DNA from: Ranitomeya imitator
Taxonomy: Eukaryota
DNA: 64,000 nucleotides
Direction of reading: 5' to 3'
Assembly: GCF_032444005.1 (NCBI RefSeq)
Contig: NC_091286.1
Location: forward strand, 278,256,001-278,320,000
In this document: piece by piece, positions 11,301 through 35,880 of the stretch
Numbering within the stretch: the stretch's first letter is position 1
How the letters are laid out: every line of letters begins with the position of its first letter
The notes under the pieces: model-generated
What the model was told of the DNA's origin: nothing
The model's input: only the letters and a program-made list of their open reading frames with translations
Database searches by the model: none
Made by a program: the position numbers and the translations under genes

Positions 11301-12577
11301 CAAACAAAAAAACTAAACACACCGTGAAAAAACTAGGGTGGGGAGGAGGACATTCCTTATATGATACCTAGGCTTGAAGCTGCCTGACAGCGGGGGTTGG
11401 CGCCCTAGGGGGAACGTTGTGGCGCCCCCGCTCAACGGCGGCTGGCCCGGGGGTCCCTAGAACGACCCTAGTATTCCCAAAGGGTCCCTCTACCCACACA
11501 GTGATGTACTAAAGGTACCCCTGTAAGCTATACATATAGCAACCTGAACCTAGGGAAACTTCAAACCCCACACCTGTGTATTAAAAACAATGAGAGAACA
11601 TGCATTTTCACACTTAATATGTGACTATTCTAGTATAACCTTACTTAAACAGATGATACTGTAATTGCCTCTATCAGCACTGTGGGGTGCACACACCAGC
11701 AGATGTCCACCATACCACATTCAGTCCAGTGTTATAATGAACACTTTTAGGACCAGATTTAATGTCCACCACCAGTCTGATGTCATACATATACTACCAA
11801 CTGAGACTCATGTATGTAATAAACCTGTGTCTCATACAGCCATGTCAAATTCCAGCCGGAATGCATTTCAAAGATAAAAGCACATGTACTCATCGTATAG
11901 TGAGGTGCCGTCCGCCTACTGTTCCTAAGTAGCCTCAACGCGTTTTGCCTCTCTGGCTCATCAGGAGGCTCGATTAATGATCATTTGTCTCGATGGTGCA
12001 GGATATATAAAAATCGCGATGTGATTTACCTCAATTTAACACAGCGCTGCTGTGTGACACGCAGATCCAGAGTGTGTTCCACTGTGTGCAGCCGCAAGGA
12101 TAGGCATTCGGTTCTACTAGTTAGAGATGAGCGCCTATTCTACTTCCGGATGCTACACAGGAAGTCCATCCTGGCGTCCTTTTCTGGCGGGTTCTGATTT
12201 AAATTGAGGTAAATCACATCGCGATTTTTATATATCATGCACCATCGAGAGTGCAAAAGTAGCTTTGAGAAGCAATGATTAGCTGATGATATAACGTAGT
12301 CACCCCGCAGTCCTGATCTGCATCTACTGTGAAGGCACAATCTACAAACATCATCAGCATGCTGCTCTTTAGCTATGTGCTGCTATGTAATTCTCTGCCC
12401 TGCTGTCTCTATGACCAACCATGCTGTTTAGTGCTCTGCCTTGGCTTCTTGCTTTATCATCCGTCTGCTCTGCCATAGTCTTCCTCTATCTCCTGTGTTC
12501 TGCAGTCAACATAGTGATTCCCCTCAGACATGCATATTCTAGAATACCCGATGCGTTAGAATCGGGCCACAATCTAG

Positions 12578-13140
12578 TATATAGATAATGTAGCCCCTCC
12601 ATAGAATACAATGTAGCCCTCCTCATATAGTATAATGCAGCCCCCATAGAATATAATGTAGCCCACTCAGAGTATAATGAAGCCCCCATACAATATAATC
12701 TAGCCCCCATAGAATATAATGCAGCCCCCCATAAAATATAATGCAACCCCTTAGAGTATAATGAAGTCCTGCATACAATATAATCTAGGCCCCATAGAAT
12801 ATAATACAGCCCCCATAGAATACAATGTAGCCCCCTCATGTAGTATAATGTAGCCCCCTATGCAATCACCCTTCATAGAATATATGAATATAATACAGCC
12901 CCCATAGAATATAATGTAGCCTCCCATAGAATTTAATACAGCCCACCTCCCATAGAATATAATGTAGCCTCCCATAGAATTTAATACAGCCCACCTCCCA
13001 TAGAATATAATGTAGCCCCCATAGAATATAATACATACCACCTCCCCATAGAATATAATGTACTCCCCATAGAATATAATACAGCCCACCTCCCCATAGA
13101 ATATAATACAGCCCCCCATAGAATATAATGTAGCCCCCCC
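12578..13140. repeat. Minisatellite (about 20-24 bp; ccccatagaatataatgtagc), left-arm copy
   Basis: Tandem degenerate units, the reverse complement of 24742-25353. Confidence 0.9.
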
Positions 13141-15543: not shown

Positions 15544-16970
15544 CAGTACAGACCAAAAGTTTGGACACACCTTCTCATTTTAACATTTTTCTGTATTTTC
15601 ATGACTATGAAAATTGTAAATTCACACTGAAGGCATCAAAACTATGAATTAACACATGTGGAATTATATACTTAACAAAAAAGTGTGAAACAACTGAAAA
15701 TATGTCTTATATTCTAGGTTCTTCAAAGTAGCCACCTTTTGCTTTGATGACTGCTTTGCACACTCTTGGCATTCTCTTGATGAGCTTCAAGTGGTAGTCG
15801 CCGGGAATGGTCTTCCAACAATCTTGAAGGAGTTCTCAGAGATGCTTAGCACTTGTTGGCCCTTTTGCCTTCACTCTGTGGTCCAGCTCACCCCAAACCA
15901 TCTCGATTGGGTTCAGGTCTAATGACTGTGGAGGCCAGGTCATCTGGCGTAGCACCCCATCACTCTCCTTCTTGGTCAAATAGCCCTTACACAGCCTGGA
16001 GGAGTGTTTGGGGTCATTGTCCTGTTGAAAAATAAATGATGGTCCAACTAAACGCAAAGCGGATGAAATGGAGTGGTAGCCATGCTGGTTCAGTATGCCT
16101 TCAATTTTGAATAAGTCCCCAACAGTGTCACCAGCAAAGCACCCCCACACTATCACACCTCCTCCTCCATGCTTCACGGTGGGAACCAGGCATGTAGAGT
16201 ACATCCGTTCACCTTTTCTGTGTTGCACAAAGACACGGTGGTTGGAACCAAAGATCTCAAATTTGGACTCATCTGACCAAACACAGATTTCAACTGGTCT
16301 AATGTCCATTGCTTGTGTTCTTTAGCCCAAACAAGTCTCTTCTGCTTGTTGCCTGTCCTTAGCAGTGGTTTCCTAGCAGCTATTTTACCATGAAGGCCTG
16401 CTGCACAAAGTCAACTCTTAACAGTTGTTGTAGAGATGTGTCTGCTGCTAGAACTCTTTGTGGCATTGACCTGGTCTCTAATCTGAGCTGCTGTTAACCT
16501 GCGATTTCTGAGGCTGGGAACTCGGATAAACTTATCGTCAGAAGCAGAGGTGACTCTTGGTCTTCCTTTCCTGGGGCGGTCCTCATGTGAGCCAGTTTCT
16601 TTGTAGCGCTTGATGGTTTTTGCAACTGCACTTGGGGACACTTTCAAAGTTTTCCCAATTTTTTGGACTGACTGACCTTTATTTCTTAAAGTAATGATGG
16701 CCATGCATCTTTCTTTACTTAGCTGCTTTTTTCTTGCCATAATACAAATTCTAACAGTCTATTCAGTAGGACTATCAGCTGTGTATCCACCAGACTTCTG
16801 CTCAACACAACTGATGGTCCCAACCCCAATTATAAAGCAAGAAATCCCACTTATTAAACCTGACAGGGCACACTTTTGAAGTGAAAAACATTTCTGGTGA
16901 CTACCTCTTGAAGCTCATCAAGAGAATGCTAAGAGTGGGCAAAGCAGTCATCAAGGCAAAAGGTAGCTAC
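15544..16970 (-). mobile_element. Tc1 element with broken transposase, left-arm copy
   Basis: (TA)n|cagtacagaccaaaagtttggacac TIR at 15544. ORFs 16411..16740 (HTH) and 15836..16309 ([20 protein letters not shown]). The other long TIR is truncated at about 16970. Confidence 0.9.
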
Positions 16971-17149
16971 TAGTTAAAACCTACAAGAGAAAAAAGTAAA
17001 TGAAAACCCTGATGTAGCTAAGTAAAAAAGCAAAAGTGCATTTAAATAATACAGAGTTTTTAGTAATACTGTTTTTTGATCAAAAAATAGCACAAAAGCC
17101 ATCCCACCTCGTCACGGTAACTCTGATCGGGACAGTCCTACACTGTCTA

Positions 17150-17510
17150 CTAATGTTGAGCATTCCGATACTGCAAATATCGGGTATCAGACGATATTTG
17201 CTGTATCGGAATTCTGATACCGAGTTCCGATATTTTTGAGATATCGGAAATCGGAATCGGAAGTTCCTATAAGTTCCCAGTCATCTTCGGCGTGTGCGGT
17301 GCATATGGTTCCCAGGGTCTGGAGGAGAGGAGACTCTCCTTAAGGCCCTGGGATCCATATTCATGTAAAAAATAAAGAATAAAAATAAAAAATATGGATA
17401 TACTCACCCCTCCGGCAAACCCTGGCTGTCACCACTGCAAGCGTCTGCCTCCATTCCTAAGAATGCAGTGGGTGAAGGACCTTCAATGACATCACGGTCA
17501 CACCTACCGA
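17150..17510. mobile_element. hAT-type MITE fragment, left-arm copy (right-arm copy about 20372-20732)
   Basis: taatgttgagcattccgatac terminus and tatcgg/ccgata subterminal repeats. Confidence 0.5.
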
Positions 17511-18727
17511 TCTCCTCCAGATCTTTCAGTTTTCAGGACTGTCATTGGGCAACATTGAGTTTCATCTCCCTTCAAAGATTTTCTGTTGGGTTCAGGTCTG
17601 GACACTGGCTAGGCCACTACATGACCTTGAAATGCTTCTTACAAAGCCACTCCTTAGTCACCCTGGCTGTGTGTTTAGGGTCATTGTTATACTGGAAGAC
17701 CTAGCCACTACCCATCTTCAATGCTCCTACTGAGGGAAGTTGGCTAAAATCTCTCGATACATGATCCAATCCATCCTCCCTTCCATATCATGCAGTCATA
17801 CTGTCCCCTTTGCAGAAAAGCATCCCCAAAGTATTATGTTTCCCCTCCATGCTTAAAGATTGGGATGGTGTACTGTGGGTTATACTCATCCTTCTTCTTC
17901 CTCCAAACACGGCGAGTAGAGTTGATACCAAAAGGTTCAATTTTGGTCTCATCTGAGCACATGACCTCTCTAATGCCTCCTCTGTATCATCCAGATGGTC
18001 ATTGGCCAACTTCAAACAGGCATGGAGTTGTGCTTGCGTGAGCAGAAGAATCTTGCATGCCCTTCAGGATTTTATTCTATGATGGCGCAGTGTGTTACAA
18101 ACAGTAATGCTTGAGACTGTGATCCCAGCTCTCTTCTGGTCATTGATCAGATCCTCCTCTGTAGTTATGGGCTGATTCCTGACCTATCTCAGAATTATCA
18201 GAATTCCACGAGGCAAATGGAGCTCCAGACCAAGGAAGACTGACAGTCATCTTGTGCTTCTTACTTATTATAATAATTTTGCCACCAGCTGTTGTCTTCT
18301 CGCTAAGCTGCTTGCCTATTGCCCTATAACCCATCCCAGCCTTGTGCAAGTCTACAATTTCTCCATCGTGTCCTTAGACAGCTCTTCGGTCTTGGCCATG
18401 GAGGAGAGGTTGGAGTGTGATTGAAAGACAGGTGTCTTTCATACAGGTAACGAGTTCAAACAGGTGCAATATCCAGGTAATGAGTGCAGAGTAGGAGGGC
18501 TCCTTAATGAGAAACTAACAGGTCTGTGAGAGCCAGAATTCTTTCCGGCTGGAAGGTGATCAAATACTTATTTCATGCAATTTCAATATTTAAAAATTAT
18601 ATAATGTGATTTTTTGCGTTGTATTTTTAGATTCTGTCTCTCACAGGTGAAGTGTACCTACGATAAAAATTACAGACCTCTCCATTCTCTGTAAATTGTA
18701 AAACTTGTAAAATCATCAGTGTATCAA
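17510..18727 (-). mobile_element. Degenerate Tc1, left-arm copy lacking the terminal 19 bp of its TIR
   Basis: Mirror of 19155-20372. It ends ...catcagtgtatcaa and then joins the hairpin. Confidence 0.85.
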
Positions 18728-19135: not shown

Positions 19136-20372
19136 CAGTGGGGAAAATAAGTATTTGATACACTGATGATTTTACAAGTTTTACAATTTACAGAGAATGG
19201 AGAGGTCTGTAATTTTTATCGTAGGTACACTTCACCTGTGAGAGACAGAATCTAAAAATACAACGCAAAAAATCACATTATATAATTTTTAAATATTGAA
19301 ATTGCATGAAATAAGTATTTGATCACCTTCCAGCCGGAAAGAATTCTGGCTCTCACAGACCTGTTAGTTTCTCATTAAGGAGCCCTCCTACTCTGCACTC
19401 ATTACCTGGATATTGCACCTGTTTGAACTCGTTACCTGTATGAAAGACACCTGTCTTTCAATCACACTCCAACCTCTCCTCCATGGCCAAGACCGAAGAG
19501 CTGTCTAAGGACACGATGGAGAAATTGTAGACTTGCACAAGGCTGGGATGGGTTATAGGGCAATAGGCAAGCAGCTTAGCGAGAAGACAACAGCTGGTGG
19601 CAAAATTATTATAATAAGTAAGAAGCACAAGATGACTGTCAGTCTTCCTTGGTCTGGAGCTCCATTTGCCTCGTGGAATTCTGATAATTCTGAGATAGGT
19701 CAGGAATCAGCCCATAACTACAGAGGAGGATCTGATCAATGACCAGAAGAGAGCTGGGATCACAGTCTCAAGCATTACTGTTTGTAACACACTGCGCCAT
19801 CATAGAATAAAATCCTGAAGGGCATGCAAGATTCTTCTGCTCACGCAAGCACAACTCCATGCCTGTTTGAAGTTGGCCAATGACCATCTGGATGATACAG
19901 AGGAGGCATTAGAGAGGTCATGTGCTCAGATGAGACCAAAATTGAACCTTTTGGTATCAACTCTACTCGCCGTGTTTGGAGGAAGAAGAAGGATGAGTAT
20001 AACCCACAGTACACCATCCCAATCTTTAAGCATGGAGGGGAAACATAATACTTTGGGGATGCTTTTCTGCAAAGGGGACAGTATGACTGCATGATATGGA
20101 AGGGAGGATGGATTGGATCATGTATCGAGAGATTTTAGCCAACTTCCCTCAGTAGGAGCATTGAAGATGGGTAGTGGCTAGGTCTTCCAGTATAACAATG
20201 ACCCTAAACACACAGCCAGGGTGACTAAGGAGTGGCTTTGTAAGAAGCATTTCAAGGTCATGTAGTGGCCTAGCCAGTGTCCAGACCTGAACCCAACAGA
20301 AAATCTTTGAAGGGAGATGAAACTCAATGTTGCCCAATGACAGTCCTGAAAACTGAAAGATCTGGAGGAGAT
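19136..20372 (+). mobile_element. Degenerate Tc1 with complete 5' TIR, right-arm copy
   Basis: cagtggggaaaataagtatttgatacac at 19136; atggccaagaccgaagagctgtctaagg start at 19483; the transposase is frameshifted. Confidence 0.85.
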
Positions 20373-20911
20373 CGGTAGGTGTGACCGTGATGTCATTGAA
20401 GGTCCTTCACCCACTGCATTCTTAGGAATGGAGGCAGACGCTTGCAGTGGTGACAGCCAGGGTTTGCCGGAGGGGTGAGTATATCCATATTTTTTATTTT
20501 TATTCTTTATTTTTTACATGAATATGGATCCCAGGGCCTTAAGGAGAGTCTCCTCTCCTCCAGACCCTGGGAACCATATGCACCGCACACGCCGAAGATG
20601 ACTGGGAACTTATAGGAACTTCCGATTCCGATTTCCGATATCTCAAAAATATCGGAACTCGGTATCAGAATTCCGATACAGCAAATATCGTCTGATACCC
20701 GATATTTGCAGTATCGGAATGCTCAACATTAGTAGACAGTGTAGGACTGTCCCGATCAGAGTTACCGTGACGAGGTGGGATGGCTTTTGTGCTATTTTTT
20801 GATCAAAAAACAGTATTACTAAAAACTCTGTATTATTTAAATGCACTTTTGCTTTTTTACTTAGCTACATCAGGGTTTTCATTTACTTTTTTCTCTTGTA
20901 GGTTTTAACTA

Positions 20912-22338
20912 GTAGCTACCTTTTGCCTTGATGACTGCTTTGCCCACTCTTAGCATTCTCTTGATGAGCTTCAAGAGGTAGTCACCAGAAATGTTTTTCA
21001 CTTCAAAAGTGTGCCCTGTCAGGTTTAATAAGTGGGATTTCTTGCTTTATAATTGGGGTTGGGACCATCAGTTGTGTTGAGCAGAAGTCTGGTGGATACA
21101 CAGCTGATAGTCCTACTGAATAGACTGTTAGAATTTGTATTATGGCAAGAAAAAAGCAGCTAAGTAAAGAAAGATGCATGGCCATCATTACTTTAAGAAA
21201 TAAAGGTCAGTCAGTCCAAAAAATTGGGAAAACTTTGAAAGTGTCCCCAAGTGCAGTTGCAAAAACCATCAAGCGCTACAAAGAAACTGGCTCACATGAG
21301 GACCGCCCCAGGAAAGGAAGACCAAGAGTCACCTCTGCTTCTGACGATAAGTTTATCCGAGTTCCCAGCCTCAGAAATCGCAGGTTAACAGCAGCTCAGA
21401 TTAGAGACCAGGTCAATGCCACAAAGAGTTCTAGCAGCAGACACATCTCTACAACAACTGTTAAGAGTTGACTTTGTGCAGCAGGCCTTCATGGTAAAAT
21501 AGCTGCTAGGAAACCACTGCTAAGGACAGGCAACAAGCAGAAGAGACTTGTTTGGGCTAAAGAACACAAGCAATGGACATTAGACCAGTTGAAATCTGTG
21601 TTTGGTCAGATGAGTCCAAATTTGAGATCTTTGGTTCCAACCACCGTGTCTTTGTGCAACACAGAAAAGGTGAACGGATGTACTCTACATGCCTGGTTCC
21701 CACCGTGAAGCATGGAGGAGGAGGTGTGATAGTGTGGGGGTGCTTTGCTGGTGACACTGTTGGGGACTTATTCAAAATTGAAGGCATACTGAACCAGCAT
21801 GGCTACCACTCCATTTCATCCGCTTTGCGTTTAGTTGGACCATCATTTATTTTTCAACAGGACAATGACCCCAAACACTCCTCCAGGCTGTGTAAGGGCT
21901 ATTTGACCAAGAAGGAGAGTGATGGGGTGCTACGCCAGATGACCTGGCCTCCACAGTCATTAGACCTGAACCCAATCGAGATGGTTTGGGGTGAGCTGGA
22001 CCACAGAGTGAAGGCAAAAGGGCCAACAAGTGCTAAGCATCTCTGAGAACTCCTTCAAGATTGTTGGAAGACCATTCCCGGCGACTACCACTTGAAGCTC
22101 ATCAAGAGAATGCCAAGAGTGTGCAAAGCAGTCATCAAAGCAAAAGGTGGCTACTTTGAAGAACCTAGAATATAAGACATATTTTCAGTTGTTTCACACT
22201 TTTTTGTTAAGTATATAATTCCACATGTGTTAATTCATAGTTTTGATGCCTTCAGTGTGAATTTACAATTTTCATAGTCATGAAAATACAGAAAAATGTT
22301 AAAATGAGAAGGTGTGTCCAAACTTTTGGTCTGTACTG
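20912..22338 (+). mobile_element. Tc1 element with broken transposase, right-arm copy
   Basis: ORFs 21142..21471 and 21573..22046; TIR ends ggtctgtactg|(TA)n at 22338. Confidence 0.9.
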
Positions 22339-24741
22339 TATATATATATATATATATATGTATCGTAATGCATCGTATCGTAATGTATCGTAATATATAT
22401 ATGTATCGTAATGCAGATGTGTTCACACAGTGCGGTAAAAGGCAACGACCGTTGCCGTGGGCAGACTCCTGTGTTTGTTTCCTCTGGCTCTGGCCTGTGT
22501 TTAGTTTCACACAGACGCGTACTGCAGAAAGCTCCTGCTCTCAAGCTTGCAAAACCAAACAATGACACACCCAAACTTCAACTCAAAGTTTTAATGTGAA
22601 TTGTGGACGTGGGCTACTCGCAAAACCCGGAGTGAAGCAAGAGATCCGTCCCACTATCAATCCTGCAGATCTCTTCAAAAATAAAAGCCCATATCAGGAT
22701 TTCTTAAATCTGACTTGACCAAATAGTTTGACCAAATCCACACTCTTTTTTTTGCATTGCAACCACAGGTGCGGCTGTGATTACAGTGCACTCCAGCGGG
22801 TTTCATAGGCTTCTGTGTGCATCCAGGGGGACACATAATGACTCTCAGCTATGATTGCTGTCTCACTATATACAGTGCATATCTTTAATAACTTTGTGTT
22901 TAAATTATCTTTATATGTTTCATACATAAAAGCAATGAAACACTGTGTTGGCAAGCTTTGTTTAAATATGTTGCTACACTGGGAGATAGTTTTAGCTAGT
23001 TCTTGGAGCTGGCAGAAGCCATGATTTATGGTACTGTGTTTCTAAGCTTATATTTTCTTTAAGTAACGTACCGTATTAAGCCATCCTCTTTTCTTCCTGT
23101 TGGGGTGATAAGATACCCGTGGCTTGCGATCTGAAGCCAGACTATTCTTGTATACTGACAGATACTGTCTGTGAGTGTTCTTGTCTCTGATGCATCTCTA
23201 TTAATTGGACCAACAGTGGCACATCTGGAGATCACTTGTATCTCATCCCAAATTAGCTTACCCAGGAAAGGGGTTTTCACAACAATGTCTAAGGCCTACC
23301 AAGTGAGGATGACATGCAGGACGTGCAGAGGACCTGGCAGCAGCTGGAGAGGTGAATGACGAGGGCTTTCTTATTCACAGCATCAGGGCTGGCGTTATGG
23401 GCAGGCAGACCAGGCAGCTGCCTGGGGCCCCCTGCTGGTTCCACAATTGAGCGCACAATCCAAATAGCACAAGGCAGTGCTTCGCTTTGCAGAAGAGACA
23501 GATGTAAGTGCATCTTATCTGTTCTGCAATGCAAGCCTTTCCCCGGCACTGCACTGCCTTGTGCTACTTATAGTAATGTCGGCGGTGATCCGGAGGCAGG
23601 AGCACTCAGGCGTGTCATACTTACCAGACCTGCACTCTGCATCTTCTCCTGTTCTGCTATGGCTATCCATCCTCACTCCTACAGCTGGCTTCTGTATTAT
23701 CATTTATACTGTGAGGTGGGCTGGCAGCTGCTGTTCAGCGGCAGGACCTTCCTATGTGACTCCTGACCGCTGACGTTGTCCTCACGTTGCACAGCAGTGC
23801 CTGTCAGGAAACAGTACAGTAGCTGTGCTGCCACCCAGGAGAAGTGTTCCTTCCCATAGAGACAACACTACATCACTGGTAAGTTTTTTTTAATGCACCT
23901 CCACACCAGTCACACACTGCACAGCAAACAAACCTCCAATGTAATAAAAGTAAAAAAGAAATGAAAAAAAAGTGATATAAAAAAATGAATGATACCAAGA
24001 GTGATAACGTCACTGTGATTGCTAGCCAAGGACCACTGCGTTCTGTAATAGGGGTCGCTCATACTAGTATATATTTTCTCATGCGAGAGAACTGCGATGA
24101 TTATCCTAATTACAGTGCACTCGACACAAACTCTCATCATTGGTTAAGCAGAGTGTCAGTTCCCTGTGATCGATTCTCTCACATGAGAGAATGATATCAC
24201 AGGTGCAGAGAAGGCAGAGAGCTTAATTTCTCCATCTTCTCCATTGTCTTTGTGTGCATATATCAGACTGCACTCTGATAACATCTGAGTGCAGTCTGAA
24301 GTCTTACATGCACTCATAGACTTTTATAGGTGCATATGGTCTGATTTGTGGAGCACTCGCTGCACGCTGCTATTGTCTTTTTATGCACAGGGCCGGCTCC
24401 ACCAGGGTCCCCCAGCCAGTGGCGTGCCGTTCATAGCTGCACATCACGCAGCCGCTATGGGGCCCCTGAGTCAGGGGGGCCCGCCTGCCGCCAGCGCCAA
24501 CTCGACCCCTCGCACCGCTGCTGCATTCAAAGCCATGATGGAGGAGAGAGCGTCAGATGATGCTCCCTCTCCCATCATTCCCCTGTCTCTGACACTGCGG
24601 GTGTGCAATGACGTTACTTAATCGATCGCCCACTGTGTGCTGCTGTTGAGACTGGAGCAGAGCCTGGAGCAGCGTGGGGCATGAGGAGAGGTGAGGATTG
24701 TGTTTTTTTAATACATCAGTGAGTACTGTGGGGCCATTCTC

Positions 24742-25353
24742 GGGGGGGCTACATTATATTCTATGGGGGGCTGTATTATATTCTATGGGGAGGTGGGCTG
24801 TATTATATTCTATGGGGAGTACATTATATTCTATGGGGAGGTGGTATGTATTATATTCTATGGGGGCTACATTATATTCTATGGGAAGGTGGGCTGTATT
24901 ATATTCTATGGGCGGCTACATTATATTCTATGGGAGGTGGGCTGTATTAAATTCTATGGGAGGCTACATTATATTCTATGGGAGGTGGGCTGTATTAAAT
25001 TCTATGGGAGGCTACATTATATTCTATGGGGGCTGTATTATATTCATATATTCTATGAAGGGTGATTGCATAGGGGGCTACATTATACTACATGAGGGGG
25101 CTACATTGTATTCTATGGGGGCTGTATTATATTCTATGGGGCCTAGATTATATTGTATGCAGGACTTCATTATACTCTAAGGGGTTGCATTATATTTTAT
25201 GGGGGGCTGCATTATATTCTATGGGGGCTAGATTATATTGTATGGGGGCTTCATTATACTCTGAGTGGGCTACATTATATTCTATGGGGGCTGCATTATA
25301 CTATATGAGGAGGGCTACATTGTATTCTATGGAGGGGCTACATTATCTATATA
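24742..25353. repeat. Minisatellite (gggggctgcattatattctat-type), continuing at 27060-27176 and 32866-33830
   Basis: The same G-rich strand orientation holds on both sides of the Helitron array and the Gypsy insertion, so it is one interrupted tract. Confidence 0.9.
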
Positions 25354-27058
25354 CTAGATTGTGGCCCGATTCTAACGCATCGGGTATTCTAGAATATGCA
25401 TGTCCCCGTAGTATATGGACAATGATGATTCCAGAATTCGCAGCACACTGTGCCCGTCGCTGATTGGTCGAGGCAACCTTTATGACATCATCGTCGCCAT
25501 GGCAACCATTATGACATCTACGTCGATACTGTGCCCGTCGCTGAATCAGAAACGTGAGATGTCTACGTCCTTTATGACATCATCGTCGCTGTGCCCGTTG
25601 CTGATTGGTTGAGGCCTGGCGGCCTCAACCAATCAGAGACGCGGGATTTCTACGTCGATGCTGTGCCGGCCTCGACCAATCAGAGAGCCGGGATTTCCAG
25701 GACAGACAGACAGACAGACAGACAGATGGAAAAACCCTTAGACAATTATATATGTACTAGATTGTGGCCCGATTCTAACGCATCGGGTATTCTAGAATAT
25801 GCATGTCCCCATAGTATATGGACAATGATGATTCCAGAATTCGCGGCACACTGTGCCTGTCACTGATTGGTCGAGGCAACCTTTATGACATCATCGTCGC
25901 CATGGCAACCATTATGATATCTACGTCGATACTGTGCCCGTCGCTGAATCAGAAACATGAGATGTCTACGTCCTTTATGACATCATCGTCGCTGTGCCTG
26001 TTGCTGATTGGTCGAGGCCTGGCGGCCTCGACCAATCAGAGACCGGCACAGCATCGACGAAGAAATCCCGCCTGGCGGCCTCGACCAATCAGCAACAGGC
26101 ACAGCGACGATGATGTCATAAAGGACGTAGACATCTCATGTTTCTGATTCAGCGACGGGCACAGTATCGACGTAGATGTCATAATGGTTGCCATGGCGAC
26201 GATGATGTCATAAAGGTTGCCTCGACCAATCAGCGACAGGCACAGTGTGCCGCGAATTCTGGAATCATCATTGTCCATATACTATGGGGACATGCATATT
26301 CTAGAATACCCGATACGTTAGAATCGGGCCACAATCTAGTATAGATATAATTGTCTAAGGGTTTTTTCCGTCTGTCTGTCTTTCGGTCTGTCTGTCTTTC
26401 TGTCTGTCTGTCTGTCCTGGAAATCCCGCGTCTCTGATTGGTCGAGGCCGCCAGGCCTCGACCAATCAGCGACGGGCACAGCGACGATGATGTCATAAGG
26501 GATGTAGAAATCCCACGTTTGATTGGTCGAGGTCGCCAGGCCTCGACCAATCAGCAACGGGCACAGCGACGATGATGTCATAAGGGACGTAGAAATCCCA
26601 CGTTTGATTGGTCGAGGTCGCCAGGCCTCGACCAATCAGCAACGGGCACAGCGACGATGATGTCATAAGGGATGTAGAAATCCCACGTTTGATTGGTTGA
26701 GGTCGCCAGGCCTCGACCAATCAGCAACGGGCACAGCGACGATGATGTCATAAAGGACGTAGACATCCCGCGTCTCTGATTGGTCGAGGTCGCCAGGCCT
26801 TGACCAATCAGCAATGGGCACAGCGACGATGATGTCATAAAGGACGTAGAAATCCCACGTTTCTGATTCAGCGACGGGCACAGTATCGATGGAGATGTCA
26901 TAATGGTTGCCATGGCGACGATGATGTCATAAAGGTTGCCTTGACCAATCAGCGAGGGGCACAGTCTGCCGCAAATTCTGGAATCATCATTGTCCATATA
27001 CTACGGGGACATGCATATTCTAGAATACCCGATGCGTTAGAATCGGGCCACAATCTAG
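25354..27058. mobile_element. Four-unit non-autonomous Helitron concatemer arranged -,-,+,+
   Basis: The 3' terminus CCCGAT-gcgttaga-ATCGGG-ccacaat-CTAG occurs at 25354(-), 25757(-), 26339(+) and 27058(+). 5'-type ends carry tataattgtctaaggg and a (GTCT)n microsatellite. Flanks are A (25353) and T (27059) with no TSD. Confidence 0.8.
26450..26880 (+). repeat. 85-bp tandem repeat (about 5 copies) inside Helitron unit 4
   Basis: gcgacgatgatgtcata recurs at 26481, 26566, 26651, 26736 and 26823. Confidence 0.9.
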
Positions 27059-27176
27059 TACTATATAAGGGGGCTATTCTATGGAGGGGCTGCATTATAT
27101 TCTGTGGGGGCTGCATTATACTCTATGAGGGGACTACCATATATTCTATGGAACGGCTATGCTATATGAGGGGGCT

Positions 27177-27924
27177 TGTTATGGCTGGCAATCAGGCAAC
27201 ACAGCGTGCAGTAATCAGCGCACATACAGAGATCTGGCAATAACCAAAAACAATAGGACGAGCTCTGAGACGTGGAATCTCTGTAGACTGCAGTACCTGA
27301 TCTATCCTCACACAACTATAAGCAGCAGTGGATTGCGCCTATCACTACCTATGCAACTCGGCACCGCCTGAGGAGCTGACTAGCCTGAAGATAGAAATAC
27401 AAGCCTGACTTACCTCAGAGAAATACCCCAAAGGAATAGGCAGCCCCCCACATATAATGACTGTTAGCAAGATGAAAAGACAAACGGAGGAATGAAATAG
27501 ATTCAGCAAAGTGAGGCCCGATATTCTAGACAGAGCGAGGATAGCAAAGAGAACTATGCAGTCTACAAAAAACCCTAAAACGAAAACCACGCAAAGGGGC
27601 AAAAAGACCCACCGTGCCGAACTAACAGCACGGCGGTGCACCCCTTTGCTTCTCAGAGCTTCCAGCAAAAGTTAATAGCAAGCTGGACAGAAAAAACAGA
27701 AAACAAACTAGAAGCACTTATCTAGCAGAGCAGCAGGCCCAAGGAAAGATGCAGTAGCTCAGATCCAACACTGGAACATTGACAAGGAGCAAGGAAGACA
27801 GACTCAGGTGGAGCTAAATAGCAAGGCAGCCAACGAGCTCACCAAAACACCTGAGGGAGGAAGCCCAGAGACTGCAATACCACTTGTGACCACAGAAGTG
27901 AACTCAGCCACAGAATTCACAACA
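27177..27924 (-). repeat. 3' LTR of the Gypsy element
   Basis: Direct repeat of 32118-32865; ORF-track translations of the two LTRs are identical. Confidence 0.95.
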
Positions 27925-30900
27925 GTACCCCCCCCTTGAGGAGGGGTCACCGAACCCTCACCAGAACCCCCAGGCCGACCAGGATGAGCCACATGAAAGG
28001 CACGAACAAGATCTGGGGCATGGACATCAGAGGCAAAAACCCAGGTATTATCTTCCTGAGCATAACCCTTCCATTTGACCAGATACTGGAGTTTCCGTCT
28101 AGAGACACGAGAATCCAAAATCTTCTCCACAATATACTCCAATTCCCCCTCCACCAAAACAGGGGCAGGAGGCTCCACAGATGGAACCATAGGTGCCACG
28201 TATCTCCTCAACAACGACCTATGGAATACATTATGTATGGAAAAGGAGTCTGGGAGGGTCAGACGAAAAGACACCGGATTGAGAATCTCAGAAATCCTAT
28301 ACGGACCAATAAAACGAGGTTTAAATTTAGGAGAGGAAACCTTCATAGGAATATGACGAGAAGATAACCAAACCAGATCCCCAACACGAAGTCGGGGTCC
28401 CACACGGCGTCTGCGATTAGCGAAAAGCTGAGCCTTCTCCTGGGACAAGGTCAAATTGTCCACTACCTGAGTCCAGATCTGCTGCAACCTGTCCACCACA
28501 GAATCCACACCAGGACAGTCCGAAGACTCAACCTGTCCTGAAGAGAAACGAGGATGGAACCCAGAATTGCAGAAAAATGGAGAGACCAAGGTAGCCGAGC
28601 TGGCCCGATTATTAAGGGCGAACTCAGCCAACGGCAAAAATGACACCCAATCATCCTGGTCAGCGGAAACAAAACATCTCAGATATGTTTCCAAGGTCTG
28701 ATTGGTTCGTTCGGTCTGGCCATTAGTCTGAGGATGGAAGGCCGAGGAGAAAGATAGGTCAATGCCCATCCTACCACAAAAGGCTCGCCAGAACCTCGAG
28801 ACAAACTGGGAACCTCTGTCAGAAACAATATTCTCAGGAATGCCATGTAAACGAACCACATGCTGGAAGAACAAAGGCACCAAATCAGAGGAGGAAGGCA
28901 ATTTAACCAAGGGCACCAGATGGACCATTTTAGAAAAGCGATCACAGACCACCCAAATGACCGACATTTTTTGAGAAACGGGAAGGTCAGAAATGAAATC
29001 CATCGAAATATGTGTCCAAGGCCTCTTCGGGACCGGCAAGGGCAAAAGCAACCCACTGGCACGTGAACAGCAGGGCTTAGCCCTAGCACAAATTCCACAG
29101 GACTGCACAAAAGCACACACATCCCGTGACAGAGATGGCCACCAGAAGGATCTAGCAACCAACTCCCTGGTACCAAAGATTCCTGGATGACCGGCCAGCA
29201 CCGAACAATGAAGTTCAGAGATAACTTTACTAGTCCACCTATCAGGGACGAACAGTTTCTCGGTCGGACAACGATCAGGTTTATTAGCCTGAAATTTCTG
29301 CAACACTCTCCGCAAATCAGGGGTAATGGCAGACACAATGACTCCTTCCTTGAGGATACTCGCCGGCTCAGATAACCCCGGAGAGTCGGGCACAAAACTC
29401 CTAGACAGAGCATCCGCCTTCACATTTTTAGAGCCCGGAAGGTATGAAATCACAAAATCAAAACGAGCAAAAAATAACGACCAACGGGCCTGTCTAGGAT
29501 TCAAGCGCTTGGCAGACTCAAGATAAGTAAGGTTCTTATGATCAGTCAAAACCACCACGCGATGCTTAGCACCCTCAAGCCAATGACGCCACTCCTCGAA
29601 TGCCCACTTCATGGCCAGCAACTCTCGGTTGCCCACATCATAATTACGCTCAGCAGCAGAAAATTTCCTGGAAAAGAAAGCACATGGTTTGAACACTGAG
29701 CAACCAGAACCTCTCTGTGACAAAACCGCCCCATCACCAATCTCAGAAGCATCAACCTCGACCTGGAACGGAAGAGAAACATCAGGTTGACACAACACAG
29801 GGGCACAGCAAAAACGACGCTTCAACTCCTGAAAAGCTTCCACGGCAGCAGAAGACCAATTAACCAAATCAGCACCCTTCTTGGTCAAATCGGTCAATGG
29901 TCTGGCAATGCTAGAAAAATTACAGATGAAGCGACGATAAAAATTAGCAAAGCCCAGGAATTTCTGCAGACTTTTTAGAGATGTCGGCTGAGTCCAATCC
30001 TGGATGGCCTGAACCTTAACCGGATCCATCTCGATAGTAGAAGGGGAAAAGATGAACCCCAAAAATGAAACTTTCTGCACACCGAAGAGACACTTTGATC
30101 CCTTCACGAACAAGGAATTAGCACGCAGTACCTGGAAAACCATTCTGACTTGCTTCACATGAGACTCCCAATCATCTGAGAAGATCAAAATGTCATCCAA
30201 GTAAACAATCAAGAATTTATCCAGATACTCACGGAAAATGTCATGCATAAAAGACTGAAAAACAGATGGAGCATTGGCAAGTCCGAACGGCATCACCAGA
30301 TACTCAAAATGACCCTCGGGCGTATTAAATGCCGTTTTCCATTCATCTCCCTGCCTGATTCTCACCAGATTATACGCACCACGAAGATCAATCTTAGTAA
30401 ACCAACTAGCCCCCTTAATCCGAGCAAACAAGTCAGAAATCAATGGCAAGGGATACTGAAACTTAACAGTGATCTTATTAAGAAGGCGGTAATCAATACA
30501 CGGTCTTAGCGAACCATCCTTCTTGGCTACAAAAAAGAACCCTGCTCCCAATGGTGACGACGATGGGCGAATATGTCCCTTCTCCAGGGACTCCTTCACA
30601 TAACTGCGCATAGCGGTGTGTTCAGGTACGGACAAATTAAATAAACGACCCTTAGGGAATTTACTACCAGGAATCAAATCGATAGCACAATCACAATTCC
30701 TATGCGGAGGTAGGGCATCAGACTTGGACTCTTCAAATACATCCTGAAAGTCCGACAAGAACTCTGGGATGTCAGAAGGAATGGATGACGAAATAGACAA
30801 AAATGGAACATCACCATGTACTCCCTGACAACCCCAGCTGGTTACCGACATAGAGTTCCAATCCAATACTGGATTATGGGTTTGTAGCCATGGCAACCCC

Positions 30901-32099
30901 AACACGACCACATCATGCAAATTATGCAGTACCAGAAAGCGAATAACTTCCTGATGTGCAGGAGCCATGCACATGGTCAGCTGGGCCCAGTACTGAGGCT
31001 TATTCTTGGCCAAAGGTGTAGCATCAATTCCTCTCAACGGAATAGGACACCGCAAAGGCTCCAAGAAAAATCCACAACGTTTAGCATAATCCAAATCCAT
31101 CAGATTCAGGGCAGCGCCTGAATCCACAAACGCCATGACAGAATACGATGACAAAGAGCACATTAAGGTAATGGACAAAAGGAATTTGGACTGTACAGTA
31201 CCAATAACGGCAGAGCTATCGAACCGCCTAGTGCGTTTAGGACAATTAGAAATAGCATGAGTAGAATCACCACAATAGAAACACAGTCTGTTCAGACGTC
31301 TGTGTTCTTGCCGTTCTACTTTAGTCATAGTCCTGTCGCACTGCATAGGCTCAGGTTTACTCTCAGACAATACCGCCAGATGGTGCACAGATTTACGCTC
31401 GCGCAAGCGACGACCGATCTGAATGGCCAAGGACATAGACTCATTCAAACCAGCAGGCATAGGAAATCCCACCATTACATCCTTAAGAGCTTCAGAGAGA
31501 CACTTTCTGAACAAAGCCGCTAGTGCAGATTCATTCCACAGAGTGAGTACTGACCACTTCCTAAATTTCTGACAATATACTTCTACATCATCCTGACCCT
31601 GGCATAAAGCCAGCAGATTTTTCTCAGCCTGATCCACTGAATTAGGCTCATCGTAAAGCAATCCCAGCGCCTGGAAAAATGCATCAACATTACTCAATGC
31701 AGAATCTCCTGGTGCAAGAGAAAACGCCCAGTCCTGTGGGTTGCCGCGCAAAAAAGAAATAATAATCAAAACCTGTTGAATAGGATTACCAGAAGAATGA
31801 GGTTTCAAGGCCAAAAATAGCTTACAATTATTTCTGAAGCTCAGGAACTTAGTTCTGTCACCAAAAAACAAATCAGGAATCGGAATTCTTGGTTCTAGCA
31901 TCGATTTCTGATCAATAGTATCTTGAATCTTTTGTACATTTACAACGAGATTATCCATTGAGGAGCACAGAGCCTGAATATCCATGTCCACAGCTGTGTC
32001 CTGAAGCACTCTAATGTCTAGGGGAAAAAAAAGACTGAAGACAGAGCTAAGAAAAAAAAATGATGTCAGGATTTCTTTTTTCCCTCTATTGGGAATCAT
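27804..32099 (-). CDS. Gag-Pol polyprotein (gag, CCHC knuckle, protease, RT, RNase H, integrase, chromodomain)
   Basis: CFYCGDSTHAISNC; FVDSGA; YLDDILIF; DAS and TDHKNL; HHCC plus D-D-E (SMDFI, VSDRG, GQTER); GPY; chromodomain EYIVEKILD...YLVKWKGY. The first ATG is at 32099 (the track start at 32132 is a TTG in the LTR); an alternative ATG is at 31985. Confidence 0.95.
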   Translation of the reverse strand: MIPNRGKKEILTSFFFLSSVFSLFFPLDIRVLQDTAVDMDIQALCSSMDNLVVNVQKIQDTIDQKSMLEPRIPIPDLFFGDRTKFLSFRNNCKLFLALKPHSSGNPIQQVLIIISFLRGNPQDWAFSLAPGDSALSNVDAFFQALGLLYDEPNSVDQAEKNLLALCQGQDDVEVYCQKFRKWSVLTLWNESALAALFRKCLSEALKDVMVGFPMPAGLNESMSLAIQIGRRLRERKSVHHLAVLSESKPEPMQCDRTMTKVERQEHRRLNRLCFYCGDSTHAISNCPKRTRRFDSSAVIGTVQSKFLLSITLMCSLSSYSVMAFVDSGAALNLMDLDYAKRCGFFLEPLRCPIPLRGIDATPLAKNKPQYWAQLTMCMAPAHQEVIRFLVLHNLHDVVVLGLPWLQTHNPVLDWNSMSVTSWGCQGVHGDVPFLSISSSIPSDIPEFLSDFQDVFEESKSDALPPHRNCDCAIDLIPGSKFPKGRLFNLSVPEHTAMRSYVKESLEKGHIRPSSSPLGAGFFFVAKKDGSLRPCIDYRLLNKITVKFQYPLPLISDLFARIKGASWFTKIDLRGAYNLVRIRQGDEWKTAFNTPEGHFEYLVMPFGLANAPSVFQSFMHDIFREYLDKFLIVYLDDILIFSDDWESHVKQVRMVFQVLRANSLFVKGSKCLFGVQKVSFLGFIFSPSTIEMDPVKVQAIQDWTQPTSLKSLQKFLGFANFYRRFICNFSSIARPLTDLTKKGADLVNWSSAAVEAFQELKRRFCCAPVLCQPDVSLPFQVEVDASEIGDGAVLSQRGSGCSVFKPCAFFSRKFSAAERNYDVGNRELLAMKWAFEEWRHWLEGAKHRVVVLTDHKNLTYLESAKRLNPRQARWSLFFARFDFVISYLPGSKNVKADALSRSFVPDSPGLSEPASILKEGVIVSAITPDLRRVLQKFQANKPDRCPTEKLFVPDRWTSKVISELHCSVLAGHPGIFGTRELVARSFWWPSLSRDVCAFVQSCGICARAKPCCSRASGLLLPLPVPKRPWTHISMDFISDLPVSQKMSVIWVVCDRFSKMVHLVPLVKLPSSSDLVPLFFQHVVRLHGIPENIVSDRGSQFVSRFWRAFCGRMGIDLSFSSAFHPQTNGQTERTNQTLETYLRCFVSADQDDWVSFLPLAEFALNNRASSATLVSPFFCNSGFHPRFSSGQVESSDCPGVDSVVDRLQQIWTQVVDNLTLSQEKAQLFANRRRRVGPRLRVGDLVWLSSRHIPMKVSSPKFKPRFIGPYRISEILNPVSFRLTLPDSFSIHNVFHRSLLRRYVAPMVPSVEPPAPVLVEGELEYIVEKILDSRVSRRKLQYLVKWKGYAQEDNTWVFASDVHAPDLVRAFHVAHPGRPGGSGEGSVTPPQGGGTVVNSVAEFTSVVTSGIAVSGLPPSGVLVSSLAALLFSST

Positions 32100-32106
32100 T
32101 GGTGTG

Positions 32107-32115
32107 GCTCCTTGT
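32107..32115 (-). promoter_or_regulatory. Primer-binding site complementary to its own LTR (self-priming type)
   Basis: Minus-strand ACAAGGAGC, 2 nt downstream of the 5' LTR, is the exact complement of GCTCCTTGT at 32731-32723. It lacks the TGG start of tRNA-primed PBSs. Confidence 0.75.
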
Positions 32116-32117
32116 AC

Positions 32118-32865
32118 TGTTATGGCTGGCAATCAGGCAACACAGCGTGCAGTAATCAGCGCACATACAGAGATCTGGCAATAACCAAAAACAATAGGAC
32201 GAGCTCTGAGACGTGGAATCTCTGTAGACTGCAGTACCTGATCTATCCTCACACAACTATAAGCAGCAGTGGATTGCGCCTATCACTACCTATGCAACTC
32301 GGCACCGCCTGAGGAGCTGACTAGCCTGAAGATAGAAATACAAGCCTGACTTACCTCAGAGAAATACCCCAAAGGAATAGGCAGCCCCCCACATATAATG
32401 ACTGTTAGCAAGATGAAAAGACAAACGGAGGAATGAAATAGATTCAGCAAAGTGAGGCCCGATATTCTAGACAGAGCGAGGATAGCAAAGAGAACTATGC
32501 AGTCTACAAAAAACCCTAAAACGAAAACCACGCAAAGGGGCAAAAAGACCCACCGTGCCGAACTAACAGCACGGCGGTGCACCCCTTTGCTTCTCAGAGC
32601 TTCCAGCAAAAGTTAATAGCAAGCTGGACAGAAAAAACAGAAAACAAACTAGAAGCACTTATCTAGCAGAGCAGCAGGCCCAAGGAAAGATGCAGTAGCT
32701 CAGATCCAACACTGGAACATTGACAAGGAGCAAGGAAGACAGACTCAGGTGGAGCTAAATAGCAAGGCAGCCAACGAGCTCACCAAAACACCTGAGGGAG
32801 GAAGCCCAGAGACTGCAATACCACTTGTGACCACAGAAGTGAACTCAGCCACAGAATTCACAACA
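32118..32865 (-). repeat. 5' LTR of the Gypsy element
   Basis: TGTTG...TAACA on the minus strand; TATA-like TATTTAG at 32761-32755. Confidence 0.95.
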
Positions 32866-35580: not shown

Positions 35581-35880
35581 CCATTAGGGTTAGGGTTAGG
35601 GTTGGGGCTAAAGTTAGGGTTGGGGCTAGAGTTGGGGTTTGGATTACGTTTACGGTTGGGTTAGGGGTGTTTCAGGGTTAGGGGTATGGTTAGGGTTGGG
35701 ATTAGGGTTAGGGGTGTGTTGGGGTTAGGGGTGTGTTGGGGTTGGGATTAGGGTTAGGGGTGTGTTTGGGTTAGGGGTGTGGTTAGGGTTGGGATTAGGG
35801 TTAAGGGGGTGTTGGGGTTAAGGGTGTGGATAGGGTTGGGATTAGGCTTAGGGGAGTGTTGAAGTTAGGTTTGGAGTTAG
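35581..35880 (+). repeat. Degenerate telomere-like (TTAGGG)n tract
   Basis: ttagggttagggttaggg interspersed with ttgggg, ttagggg and tgtg variants. Confidence 0.85.

What the first reader, a model, noticed from the sequence alone, without database searches (positions are those of the whole stretch)
25354..27058. Double-3'-ended Helitron: head-to-head concatemer that mimics a TIR element
Seen: four units oriented -,-,+,+, so both outer ends are Helitron 3' termini (hairpin+CTAG) and no outer 5'-TC end exists. The block sits between A and T with no TSD, inside a minisatellite that resumes in the same orientation. The internal CTAG|t..tataattgtctaaggg junctions are head-to-tail. Established: rolling-circle transposition yields head-to-tail tandems and A|T insertion. 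Inference: strand switching during rolling-circle replication, or fusion of two oppositely inserted tandems, produced a palindromic unit that might move or recombine as a whole. I do not recall this configuration being described.
Basis: partly seen in the sequence, partly recalled or inferred. Interest (0 to 1): 0.75.

Follow-up and report, generated by a model that had tools for sequence, protein, structure and literature searches.

The report
Head-to-head Helitron nest, not mobile
Four copies of a small rolling-circle transposon (Helitron) in a poison-frog genome do sit back to back, so that both outer ends are 3' ends. The block is a patchwork of separately derived copies joined at a hairpin-forming motif, not a new kind of mobile palindrome.

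Summary
Window 25354-27058 carries four units of one non-autonomous Helitron family, oriented -,-,+,+. Both outer ends are hairpin+CTAG 3' termini, next to host A and T, inside a 21-bp minisatellite that resumes in the same orientation.

I fetched 312 kb of Ranitomeya imitator DNA through gene models that contain the unit's antisense ORF. The family there is a canonical Helitron (A|TC 5' end, hairpin+CTAG|T 3' end) and often forms head-to-tail arrays.

The block is not one palindromic unit.
- Only the inner pair B/C are sister copies: 3 differences in 247 nt and 4 shared private CpG changes.
- The outer units A and D differ at 10 of 247 sites, including 3 lineage-diagnostic non-CpG sites, and in internal repeat structure. 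A is 99% identical to copies at other loci.
- B and C meet inside the unit's own 36-bp perfect palindrome (DNA hairpin -20.7 kcal/mol).
- Inverted junctions occur at two other clusters of the family.
- The neighbouring 12.9-kb, 100%-identical palindrome ends 51 nt inside unit A.

Best reading: opposite-facing independent insertions, with a centre fused or refilled at the palindrome. The whole block has no outer 5' end, which Helraiser needs to move.

The scan flagged a similar double-3' "fold-back Helitron" elsewhere in this genome (s1-295083). I could not check it.

The parts
24736..25353 (+). Left part of the 21-bp host minisatellite; it ends in host A at 25353.
   Evidence: TRF period 21; direct-repeat families D1, D2, D7.
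25354..25756 (-). Unit A: a full-length 403-nt Helitron unit. Its 3' CTAG is at 25354-25357, the hairpin at 25365-25384, and the degenerate 5' end at 25756. It is near the family consensus.
   Evidence: It is 99.2% identical to L015 9940 and has 1 private change.
25757..26039 (-). Unit B: the 3' part of a unit, from its CTAG at 25757-25760 up to the palindrome P1. It is the sister copy of C.
   Evidence: The B+C clade has 98/96 support, with 4 shared private CpG transitions.
26004..26039 (.). P1: a 36-bp perfect palindrome (16-nt arms, 4-nt loop) in which B(-) and C(+) are joined. Its sequence reads the same in both orientations.
   Evidence: DNA hairpin -20.7 kcal/mol, z -7.8. The continuation to its right is the normal one for a + unit.
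26020..26076 (.). The 57-nt asymmetric spacer between the long inverted arms. It holds the P1 loop and right arm, AGAC, and the 28-nt segment X in + orientation. It is bracketed by a 20-nt direct repeat (26020-26039 and 26073-26092). The left arm of C's second P1 copy is missing at 26072/26073.
   Evidence: Inverted pair I2 and direct family D8.
26040..26339 (+). Unit C: the 3' part of a unit, ending in CTAG at 26336-26339, with the hairpin at 26309-26328.
26340..27058 (+). Unit D: a full-length unit of a different sub-lineage. It has a degenerate 5' end at 26340, a (GTCT)n run at 26365-26417, 5.2 copies of the 85-bp repeat at 26420-26862, the hairpin at 27028-27047, and CTAG at 27055-27058.
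   Evidence: It has 6 private changes and 3 lineage-diagnostic differences from A, B and C.
27059..27167 (+). The minisatellite resumes in the same orientation, starting with host T. It is cut by a Gypsy LTR element and continues at 32866.
12527..12577 (+). Inverted copy of the last 51 nt of unit A. This is the outer edge of the 12.9-kb, 100%-identical palindrome (12527-18727 against 19155-25404). It is not an independent Helitron end.

Best explanation
The block is a Helitron nest built in several steps. It is not one palindromic element.

Copies of one non-autonomous family entered a Helitron-associated minisatellite in both orientations. A and B lie on the minus strand, C and D on the plus strand. 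Each pair is joined head-to-tail, as is usual for this family, and the two pairs face each other 5' end to 5' end.

The middle was then lost or refilled at the unit's own 36-bp hairpin-forming palindrome (P1). P1 reads the same in both orientations, so it offers homology between opposed units. Two routes give the same product:
- a deletion between the P1 copies of two opposed units; or
- a break followed by snap-back priming at P1, copying B from C or C from B, with capture of the homologous 5' end of the next unit.

Shown here: Helitron identity, the orientations, the ends, the junction inside P1, B and C as sister copies, and A and D as unrelated copies.

Inferred: the order of events, which of the two routes made the joint, and immobility. 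The whole block has no outer 5' end, so the rolling-circle machinery should move only A or D singly.
For: 1. The family is a canonical Helitron. Solo copies in L014, L016, L017, L019 and L020 begin A|TCTATATAT, and about 20 termini end hairpin+CTAG|T.
2. Direct head-to-tail junctions are common: 7 in 312 kb. They also occur between dissimilar units; the L013 array ranges from 74% to 98% identity to A. Independent adjacent insertion is documented in maize (PMC2267711).
3. A and D differ at 10 of 247 sites. Three of these are non-CpG sites that each shares with other genomic copies. A carries the half-site plus X and one 85-bp repeat; D carries five repeats and no half-site. A is closer to L015 9940 and L018 9940 (2 differences each) than to D.
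4. B and C form a clade (98/96 support) with 4 private shared CpG transitions.
5. The joint lies in P1 (-20.7 kcal/mol). The sequence to its right is the normal continuation of a + unit, seen in 10 other copies. A snap-back product modelled from unit A is 577 nt against 583 observed, with 552 of 584 columns identical.
6. The family rearranges this way elsewhere. L015 has a 98-nt hairpin centred on P1 next to a minus unit's 5' end (-60 kcal/mol), and L015 and L018 have convergent junctions.
7. The adjacent 12.9-kb palindrome has its break 51 nt inside A, unrelated to any Helitron terminus.
8. Deleting the 5' end abolishes Helraiser transposition.
Against: - The sister status of B and C needs one of three things: a copying step, a shared source copy, or arm-to-arm gene conversion. 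I cannot tell which.
- Unit A looks younger (1 private change) than D (6) or the B/C lineage (6-7). That implies an insertion at or beside a resident 3' end, which is non-canonical (G|T). Alternatively it is chance, with Poisson P about 0.01-0.02.
- The A-D versus B-C contrast alone is only marginal: 10 versus 3 differences in 247 nt, Fisher P = 0.09.
- The minisatellite is too irregular to say whether the block occupies one A|T site or two.
- The sample of other loci is small (312 kb) and biased toward copies inside gene models.
- A scan note reports another double-3' fold-back Helitron in this genome. That could mean a regular mechanism.
Confidence: 0.6

Rival explanations
1. In-situ fold-back (inverted duplication) of a single inserted tandem. 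One C-D tandem entered the minisatellite, and a hairpin-primed or template-switch event at P1 copied it backwards to give B and A.
For: B and C are sister copies, and the centre is at a strong hairpin. The same locus holds a second, 100%-identical fold-back palindrome. Fold-back inversions at short inverted repeats are well documented (PMC3907307 and PMC7467729, listed; I saw only their titles and abstracts).
Against: - A is not a copy of D: 3 lineage-diagnostic differences and a different repeat architecture.
- A fold-back would copy the right flank in inverted orientation. Instead the left arm stops exactly at a Helitron 3' terminus, and the minisatellite continues in direct orientation.
Confidence: 0.15
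2. Strand switching during rolling-circle replication made a palindromic double-3' Helitron (the whole block, or only the 583-nt B|C core), and this integrated, and may still move, as a unit.
For: - Both outer ends, and both ends of the B|C core, are exact 3' termini.
- P1 would fold readily in a single-stranded intermediate.
- Scan note s1-295083 reports a second 'fold-back Helitron with a 3' end at both termini' with 273-bp arms, about the distance from the terminus to P1 (unverified).
Against: - For the whole block, A and D are not mirror copies.
- No outward-facing terminus pair lies within 5 kb in 312 kb of related DNA holding about 25 termini.
- On either strand only one of the two 3' ends is in the sense orientation, and no 5' end lies upstream of it. 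Helraiser cannot move without its 5' end.
- Exact ends are equally explained by ordinary insertions beside resident ends.
Confidence: 0.12
3. A terminal-inverted-repeat element (a MITE-like or foldback-type transposon) with arms of about 300 bp and a short target duplication (TA, or the 7-nt CTATATA).
For: 305-nt inverted arms at 95% identity (pair I1). TA flanks both ends, and CTATATA occurs on both sides.
Against: Solo copies of the same family are asymmetric, with a 5' TC end and a 3' hairpin+CTAG end and no terminal inverted repeat. The same terminus recurs inside the block at head-to-tail joints. The flank repeat is offset by 2 nt and lies in TA-rich low-complexity sequence.
Confidence: 0.03
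4. Assembly artefact: a chimeric or fold-back read produced the palindrome.
For: The neighbouring 12.9-kb palindrome is 100% identical apart from one 49-nt repeat-unit offset. Such identity is compatible with an artefact or with a very recent event.
Against: The arms of the Helitron block differ by 1-5%, and differ in repeat number. A duplicated read would not give that.
Confidence: 0.03

Closest known systems
Canonical (Helitron1-type) non-autonomous Helitrons, such as the HelibatN/Helraiser system in bats and Heli1Xen1 in Xenopus
   Same: A 5' TC end followed by a TA-rich stretch, a subterminal hairpin 11 nt before a 3' CTAG, and insertion between A and T without target duplication.
   Different: In this block the two outer ends are both 3' ends, and the 5' ends of the two full units lie inside and are degenerate (TA...). 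No Rep/helicase partner was looked for.
Head-to-tail Helitron tandems and adjacent insertions (bat tandems cited in, and maize 'back-to-back' Helitrons described in, PMC2267711)
   Same: Exact CTAG|T(C/A) joints with no host base between units. Dissimilar neighbours imply consecutive insertions at a resident end.
   Different: Here two such pairs face each other in opposite orientation and have been fused. I found no description of that arrangement in the papers searched.
Fold-back inversions and palindromes seeded by short inverted repeats (PMC3907307, PMC7467729), with later remodelling of the palindrome centre
   Same: The centre sits at a strong pre-existing hairpin, there is a short asymmetric spacer, and the inner arms are sister copies.
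   Different: The outer arms are not copies of one another, and they stop exactly at transposon termini. A plain chromosomal fold-back does not explain the whole block.
Helentron/Helitron2 elements and Foldback-type transposons, which naturally carry inverted termini (from my own knowledge, not checked in a paper here)
   Same: Superficially, inverted ends and internal tandem repeats or a microsatellite.
   Different: Solo copies of this family have no inverted termini and insert at A|T. The roughly 300-nt inverted arms here are whole Helitron 3' halves.

Membership tests
Canonical Helitron (Helitron1 type) | 5' terminus TC, joined to host A | tested here: met
   About 10 solo or outer 5' ends in L013-L020 read A|TC(TATATAT or TACTAT) followed by the conserved head motif. 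The two 5' ends inside the window block are degenerate (TA...).
Canonical Helitron (Helitron1 type) | 3' terminus CTRR, followed by host T | tested here: met
   All termini of this sub-family with at most one mismatch end in CTAG, apart from one degenerate TTAG copy in L013. All are followed by T on their own strand, in the window and in L013-L020.
Canonical Helitron (Helitron1 type) | Short hairpin about 10-12 nt upstream of the 3' end | tested here: met
   A 6-bp stem with an 8-nt loop, 11 nt before the end; -6.4 kcal/mol, z -2.9.
Canonical Helitron (Helitron1 type) | No terminal inverted repeats and no target-site duplication in single copies | tested here: met
   The solo copies in L014, L017 and L020 are asymmetric. 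Their flanks show no duplication in the stretches printed.
Canonical Helitron (Helitron1 type) | An autonomous partner encoding Rep/helicase that shares the termini | not tested
   No eukaryotic genome collection could be searched by DNA, and I had no RepHel reference sequence on hand.
Mobile composite (double-3' Helitron that transposes as a unit) | Two or more copies with the same internal structure at independent target sites | tested here: inconclusive
   None in the window outside the block. No outward-facing terminus pair lies within 5 kb in 312 kb of R. imitator DNA. One unverified scan note describes a similar element. A genome-wide scan was not possible.
Mobile composite (double-3' Helitron that transposes as a unit) | A 5' end (LTS) in the sense orientation upstream of the 3' end used | tested here: not met
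   There is no outer 5' end. The only 5' ends are internal (25756 and 26340) and would mobilise A or D alone. The 5' end is essential in Helraiser.
Single-event inverted duplication (fold-back palindrome) | Both arm pairs are mirror copies of equal age | tested here: not met
   B-C: 3 differences in 247 nt, with shared private changes. A-D: 10 in 247, including 3 lineage-diagnostic sites, plus a different repeat architecture.
Single-event inverted duplication (fold-back palindrome) | Centre at a short inverted repeat able to snap back | tested here: met
   The joint lies inside the 36-bp palindrome P1; a snap-back model reproduces the core.
TIR transposon / MITE | Terminal inverted repeats present in every copy, with a constant target duplication | tested here: not met
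   Solo family copies lack inverted termini. The flank repeat at the block is offset and low-complexity.

The most novel reading that the evidence does not exclude
The 36-bp palindrome inside this Helitron family regularly makes single-stranded or broken transposition intermediates snap back and self-prime, in a 'rolling-hairpin'-like side reaction. This would yield double-3'-ended fold-back Helitrons, such as the 583-nt B|C core here and the 891-nt element of scan note s1-295083, which then integrate at A|T sites next to resident Helitron ends.
Probability: 0.15. Interest if true: 0.7.

Novelty: new member of a known kind. Interest (0 to 1): 0.33.

Why it matters
If the block were a mobile palindromic Helitron, it would add a new product to rolling-circle transposition. 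It would also create Helitron copies that annotation pipelines misread as TIR elements. The evidence points instead to ordinary ingredients: clustered Helitron insertions, a hairpin-forming internal motif, and palindrome remodelling.

The useful results are narrower:
- A poison-frog Helitron family is now defined by its 5' and 3' ends.
- The family carries a strong internal palindrome and rearranges into inverted forms at three of the roughly twenty clusters sampled, counting the window.
- Such nests can mimic TIR elements, which matters for repeat annotation in large amphibian genomes.

Tried and rejected
- Metagenome scan for the 17-nt terminus: 12 hits, all chance matches with no similarity beyond the 17-mer.
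- Look-up of earlier scan findings by sequence: nothing.
- Exact look-up of 8 window ORFs (Gypsy, Tc1 fragments and others), to find the same locus in another assembly: none is in the collection. I ran no further search on this.
- All 24 antisense ORFs of family copies are unique sequences, so exact look-ups cannot fetch further copies.
[quoted passage not shown] No paper on poison-frog Helitrons was found.
- Inversion between P1 copies within one head-to-tail array: rejected, because it predicts another unit's 5' part beyond A's 3' end, not host DNA.
- TIR/MITE reading: rejected on the asymmetric solo copies.
- The minisatellite phase argument for one versus two target sites: abandoned, because unit lengths around the block are irregular (24, 31, 16, 21 nt).
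- A full step-by-step derivation of the 57-nt spacer, in particular the lost left arm and flipped loop of C's second P1: not resolved. A small quasi-palindrome template switch is the likeliest cause.

Full report
**What is in the window**

Reading 24700-27700 and the repeat analysis confirm the anatomy.
It starts at 25354 and 25757 on one strand and ends at 26339 and 27058 on the other.
- The fifth copy, ending at 12577, is part of a 12.9-kb inverted duplication (12527-18727 against 19155-25404). That duplication is 100% identical apart from one 49-nt repeat-unit offset, and its right arm stops 51 nt inside unit A. It is therefore not an independent Helitron end.
- The four units are A(-) 25354-25756, B(-) 25757 to about 26039, C(+) about 26004 to 26339, and D(+) 26340-27058. 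A and D are full length. B and C lack their 5' parts.
- Every 3' end has a small hairpin 11 nt before CTAG (-6.4 kcal/mol, z -2.9) and is followed by T on its own strand.
- The 21-bp minisatellite lies in direct orientation on both sides.

**Getting other copies of the family**

No eukaryotic DNA collection was available. A metagenome scan for the terminus gave only chance matches.

The antisense strand of the unit carries an ORF (window 26581-26997, minus strand). A protein search with it returned eight gene models, all from Ranitomeya imitator. Their contigs gave loci L013-L020, about 312 kb of frog DNA. These hold about 25 termini of this and a sister sub-family.
- Solo copies (L014, L016, L017, L019, L020) start after host A with TC, then a TA-rich run and a conserved head motif.
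- Exact head-to-tail joints (CTAG|TC...) are frequent: seven in the sample. They also occur between dissimilar units. The L013 array has at least six units at 74-98% identity to A, and there are joints between the two sub-families in L017 and L019.
- The two internal joints of the window block (CTAG|TACATAT..., CTAG|TATAGAT...) are degenerate versions of this joint.
- A maize study concluded that such neighbours can arise by consecutive insertion at a resident end (PMC2267711).

**The block is a mosaic**

I aligned the 247-nt unique 3' region of 18 copies.
- B and C form a clade (bootstrap 98, SH-aLRT 96). They share four CpG transitions; three are found in no other sampled copy and one recurs in a single L013 copy. 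They differ from each other at 3 sites.
- A differs from D at 10 sites. Three of these are non-CpG positions where A, B and C carry one state and D another, and each state is shared with other genomic copies.
- A is only 2 differences from L015 9940 and from L018 9940. D is nearest to L015 9298, L015 5939 and L019 21844.
- A and D also differ in architecture. A has a half-palindrome, a 28-nt segment X and one 85-bp repeat. D has five 85-bp repeats and a longer (GTCT)n run.
- Private changes are A 1, B 3, C 1-2, D 6.

The outer units are therefore separate arrivals of different sub-lineages, not the two arms of one duplication. Taken alone, the 10-versus-3 contrast is only marginal (Fisher P = 0.09). 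The weight rests on the lineage-diagnostic sites and on the architecture.

**The centre**

Each unit carries copies of a 36-bp perfect palindrome, P1 (for example window 26004-26039), which holds two opposed CCAAT-box motifs. As single-stranded DNA it folds at -20.7 kcal/mol (z -7.8).

B(-) and C(+) are joined inside such a copy. To its left the sequence is the normal minus-orientation flank. To its right, AGAC plus segment X is the normal continuation of a plus unit after its first P1 copy, as seen in ten other family copies. C's second P1 copy has lost its left arm at 26072/26073. That leaves a 57-nt asymmetric spacer bracketed by a 20-nt direct repeat.

Because P1 reads the same in both orientations, two opposed units share it as a direct repeat. 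Two routes then give the observed joint:
- a deletion between the P1 copies of two opposed units; or
- a snap-back of a broken end onto P1, followed by copying.

A snap-back product modelled from unit A's own sequence is 577 nt against 583 observed. It matches at 552 of 584 columns, and nearly all mismatches fall in segment X.

**The family does this elsewhere**

- L015 holds a 98-nt near-perfect hairpin centred on P1 (-60 kcal/mol), directly beside the 5' end of a minus unit. This is another divergent joint.
- The two L015 clusters hold two convergent joints in which an 18-nt GC-rich filler replaces the 3' hairpin. The two joints look like duplicates of one another.
- L018 has a plus copy truncated at its 3' side facing a full minus copy across 111 nt.
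- None of these is a clean double-3' block. No outward-facing terminus pair lies within 5 kb in the 312 kb.

**Context**

- The minisatellite resumes at 32866, after a Gypsy LTR element that also landed in it.
- A related 21-22-bp satellite lies inside sister-family Helitrons in L018 (37521-38886) and L017 (24286-28518).
- The block therefore sits in a Helitron-associated satellite that collects insertions. That makes repeated independent hits plausible.

**Mechanism and mobility**

In the Helraiser system, deleting the 5' end abolishes transposition, while deleting the 3' end leaves about 24% activity (PMC4778049). On either strand of the block only one outer 3' end is in the sense orientation, and no 5' end lies upstream of it. 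The only usable 5' ends are internal (25756 and 26340) and would move A or D alone. Immobility of the whole block is an inference from that work, not a test.

**Weighing the readings**

- Independent opposed insertions plus a P1-mediated joint explain the exact termini, the unrelated outer units, the position of the centre and the family's habits. I give this 0.6.
- What it does not settle is why B and C are sisters. The options are copying by snap-back with capture of the neighbour's homologous 5' end, two insertions from one source, or arm-to-arm gene conversion.
- A plain in-situ fold-back of one tandem fails on A versus D and on the direct-orientation flank (0.15).
Scan note s1-295083 reports another "fold-back Helitron with a 3' end at both termini" with 273-bp arms, about the distance from terminus to P1. 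I could not see that sequence.
- The TIR-element and assembly-artefact readings are rejected on the asymmetric solo copies and on the 1-5% arm divergence.

**Limits**

- The sample of other loci is small and biased toward copies inside gene models.
- The target-site question (one A|T site or two) is undecidable in this irregular minisatellite. The joined flanks give a 31-nt unit, and a 7-nt CTATATA repeat sits offset by 2 nt.
- The order of events rests on a handful of substitutions.
- The window's species is inferred only from the exclusive R. imitator hits and the 92-99% identity of most of the family copies sampled there.

Noticed in passing
window 12527-18727 and 19155-25404: A 12.9-kb palindrome with 100%-identical arms (one 49-nt minisatellite offset) and a 427-nt spacer. 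Its right arm ends 51 nt inside Helitron unit A. It is either very recent or an assembly problem. It is already noted by the scan as s1-292469.
   Followed up: partly
window 27177-32865: A Gypsy-type LTR element with an ORF of about 1430 aa on the minus strand and identical LTR starts (300 of 300 nt). It sits in the same minisatellite about 110 nt from the Helitron block. The minisatellite resumes at 32866 and grades into a 31/60-bp satellite up to 33826.
   Followed up: partly
L018 37521-38886; L017 24286-28518; window 24526-24639: A 21-22-bp satellite related to the window's minisatellite lies inside sister-family Helitrons (5' TCTACTAT..., 3' ...CCATCTAG). Window 24526-24639 matches an internal part of the L017 element at 87%. 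The host minisatellite may therefore be the cargo of a larger, broken Helitron.
   Followed up: partly
L013-L020 gene models P0001-P0008: Eight R. imitator gene models, including ones with Cpn10 (HSPE1-like) and FGF13 domains, use the Helitron's antisense ORF (starting MDNDDSRI, 61 nt inside the 3' end) as a first, internal or last exon. This is either an annotation artefact or exonisation.
   Followed up: no
window 26434-26811 and every family copy: Each 85-bp internal repeat carries the 36-bp palindrome, which is made of two opposed CCAAT-box (Y-box) motifs and lies next to TGACATCA-like motifs. This is a promoter-like cargo multiplied inside the element.
   Followed up: no
L015 6167-6186 and 9526-9545: At two convergent joints the same 18-nt GC-rich filler replaces the 3' hairpin and terminus. 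The two L015 clusters (5.9-6.6 kb and 9.2-9.9 kb) look like duplicates of one rearranged segment.
   Followed up: no
L013 15535-18470: A head-to-tail array of at least six Helitron units whose 3' regions range from 74% to 98% identity to unit A. It is a heterogeneous array, not a young rolling-circle tandem.
   Followed up: partly
window 35584-35869: An interstitial telomere-like (TTAGGG)n array with degenerate higher-order periods of 47 and 93 bp.
   Followed up: no
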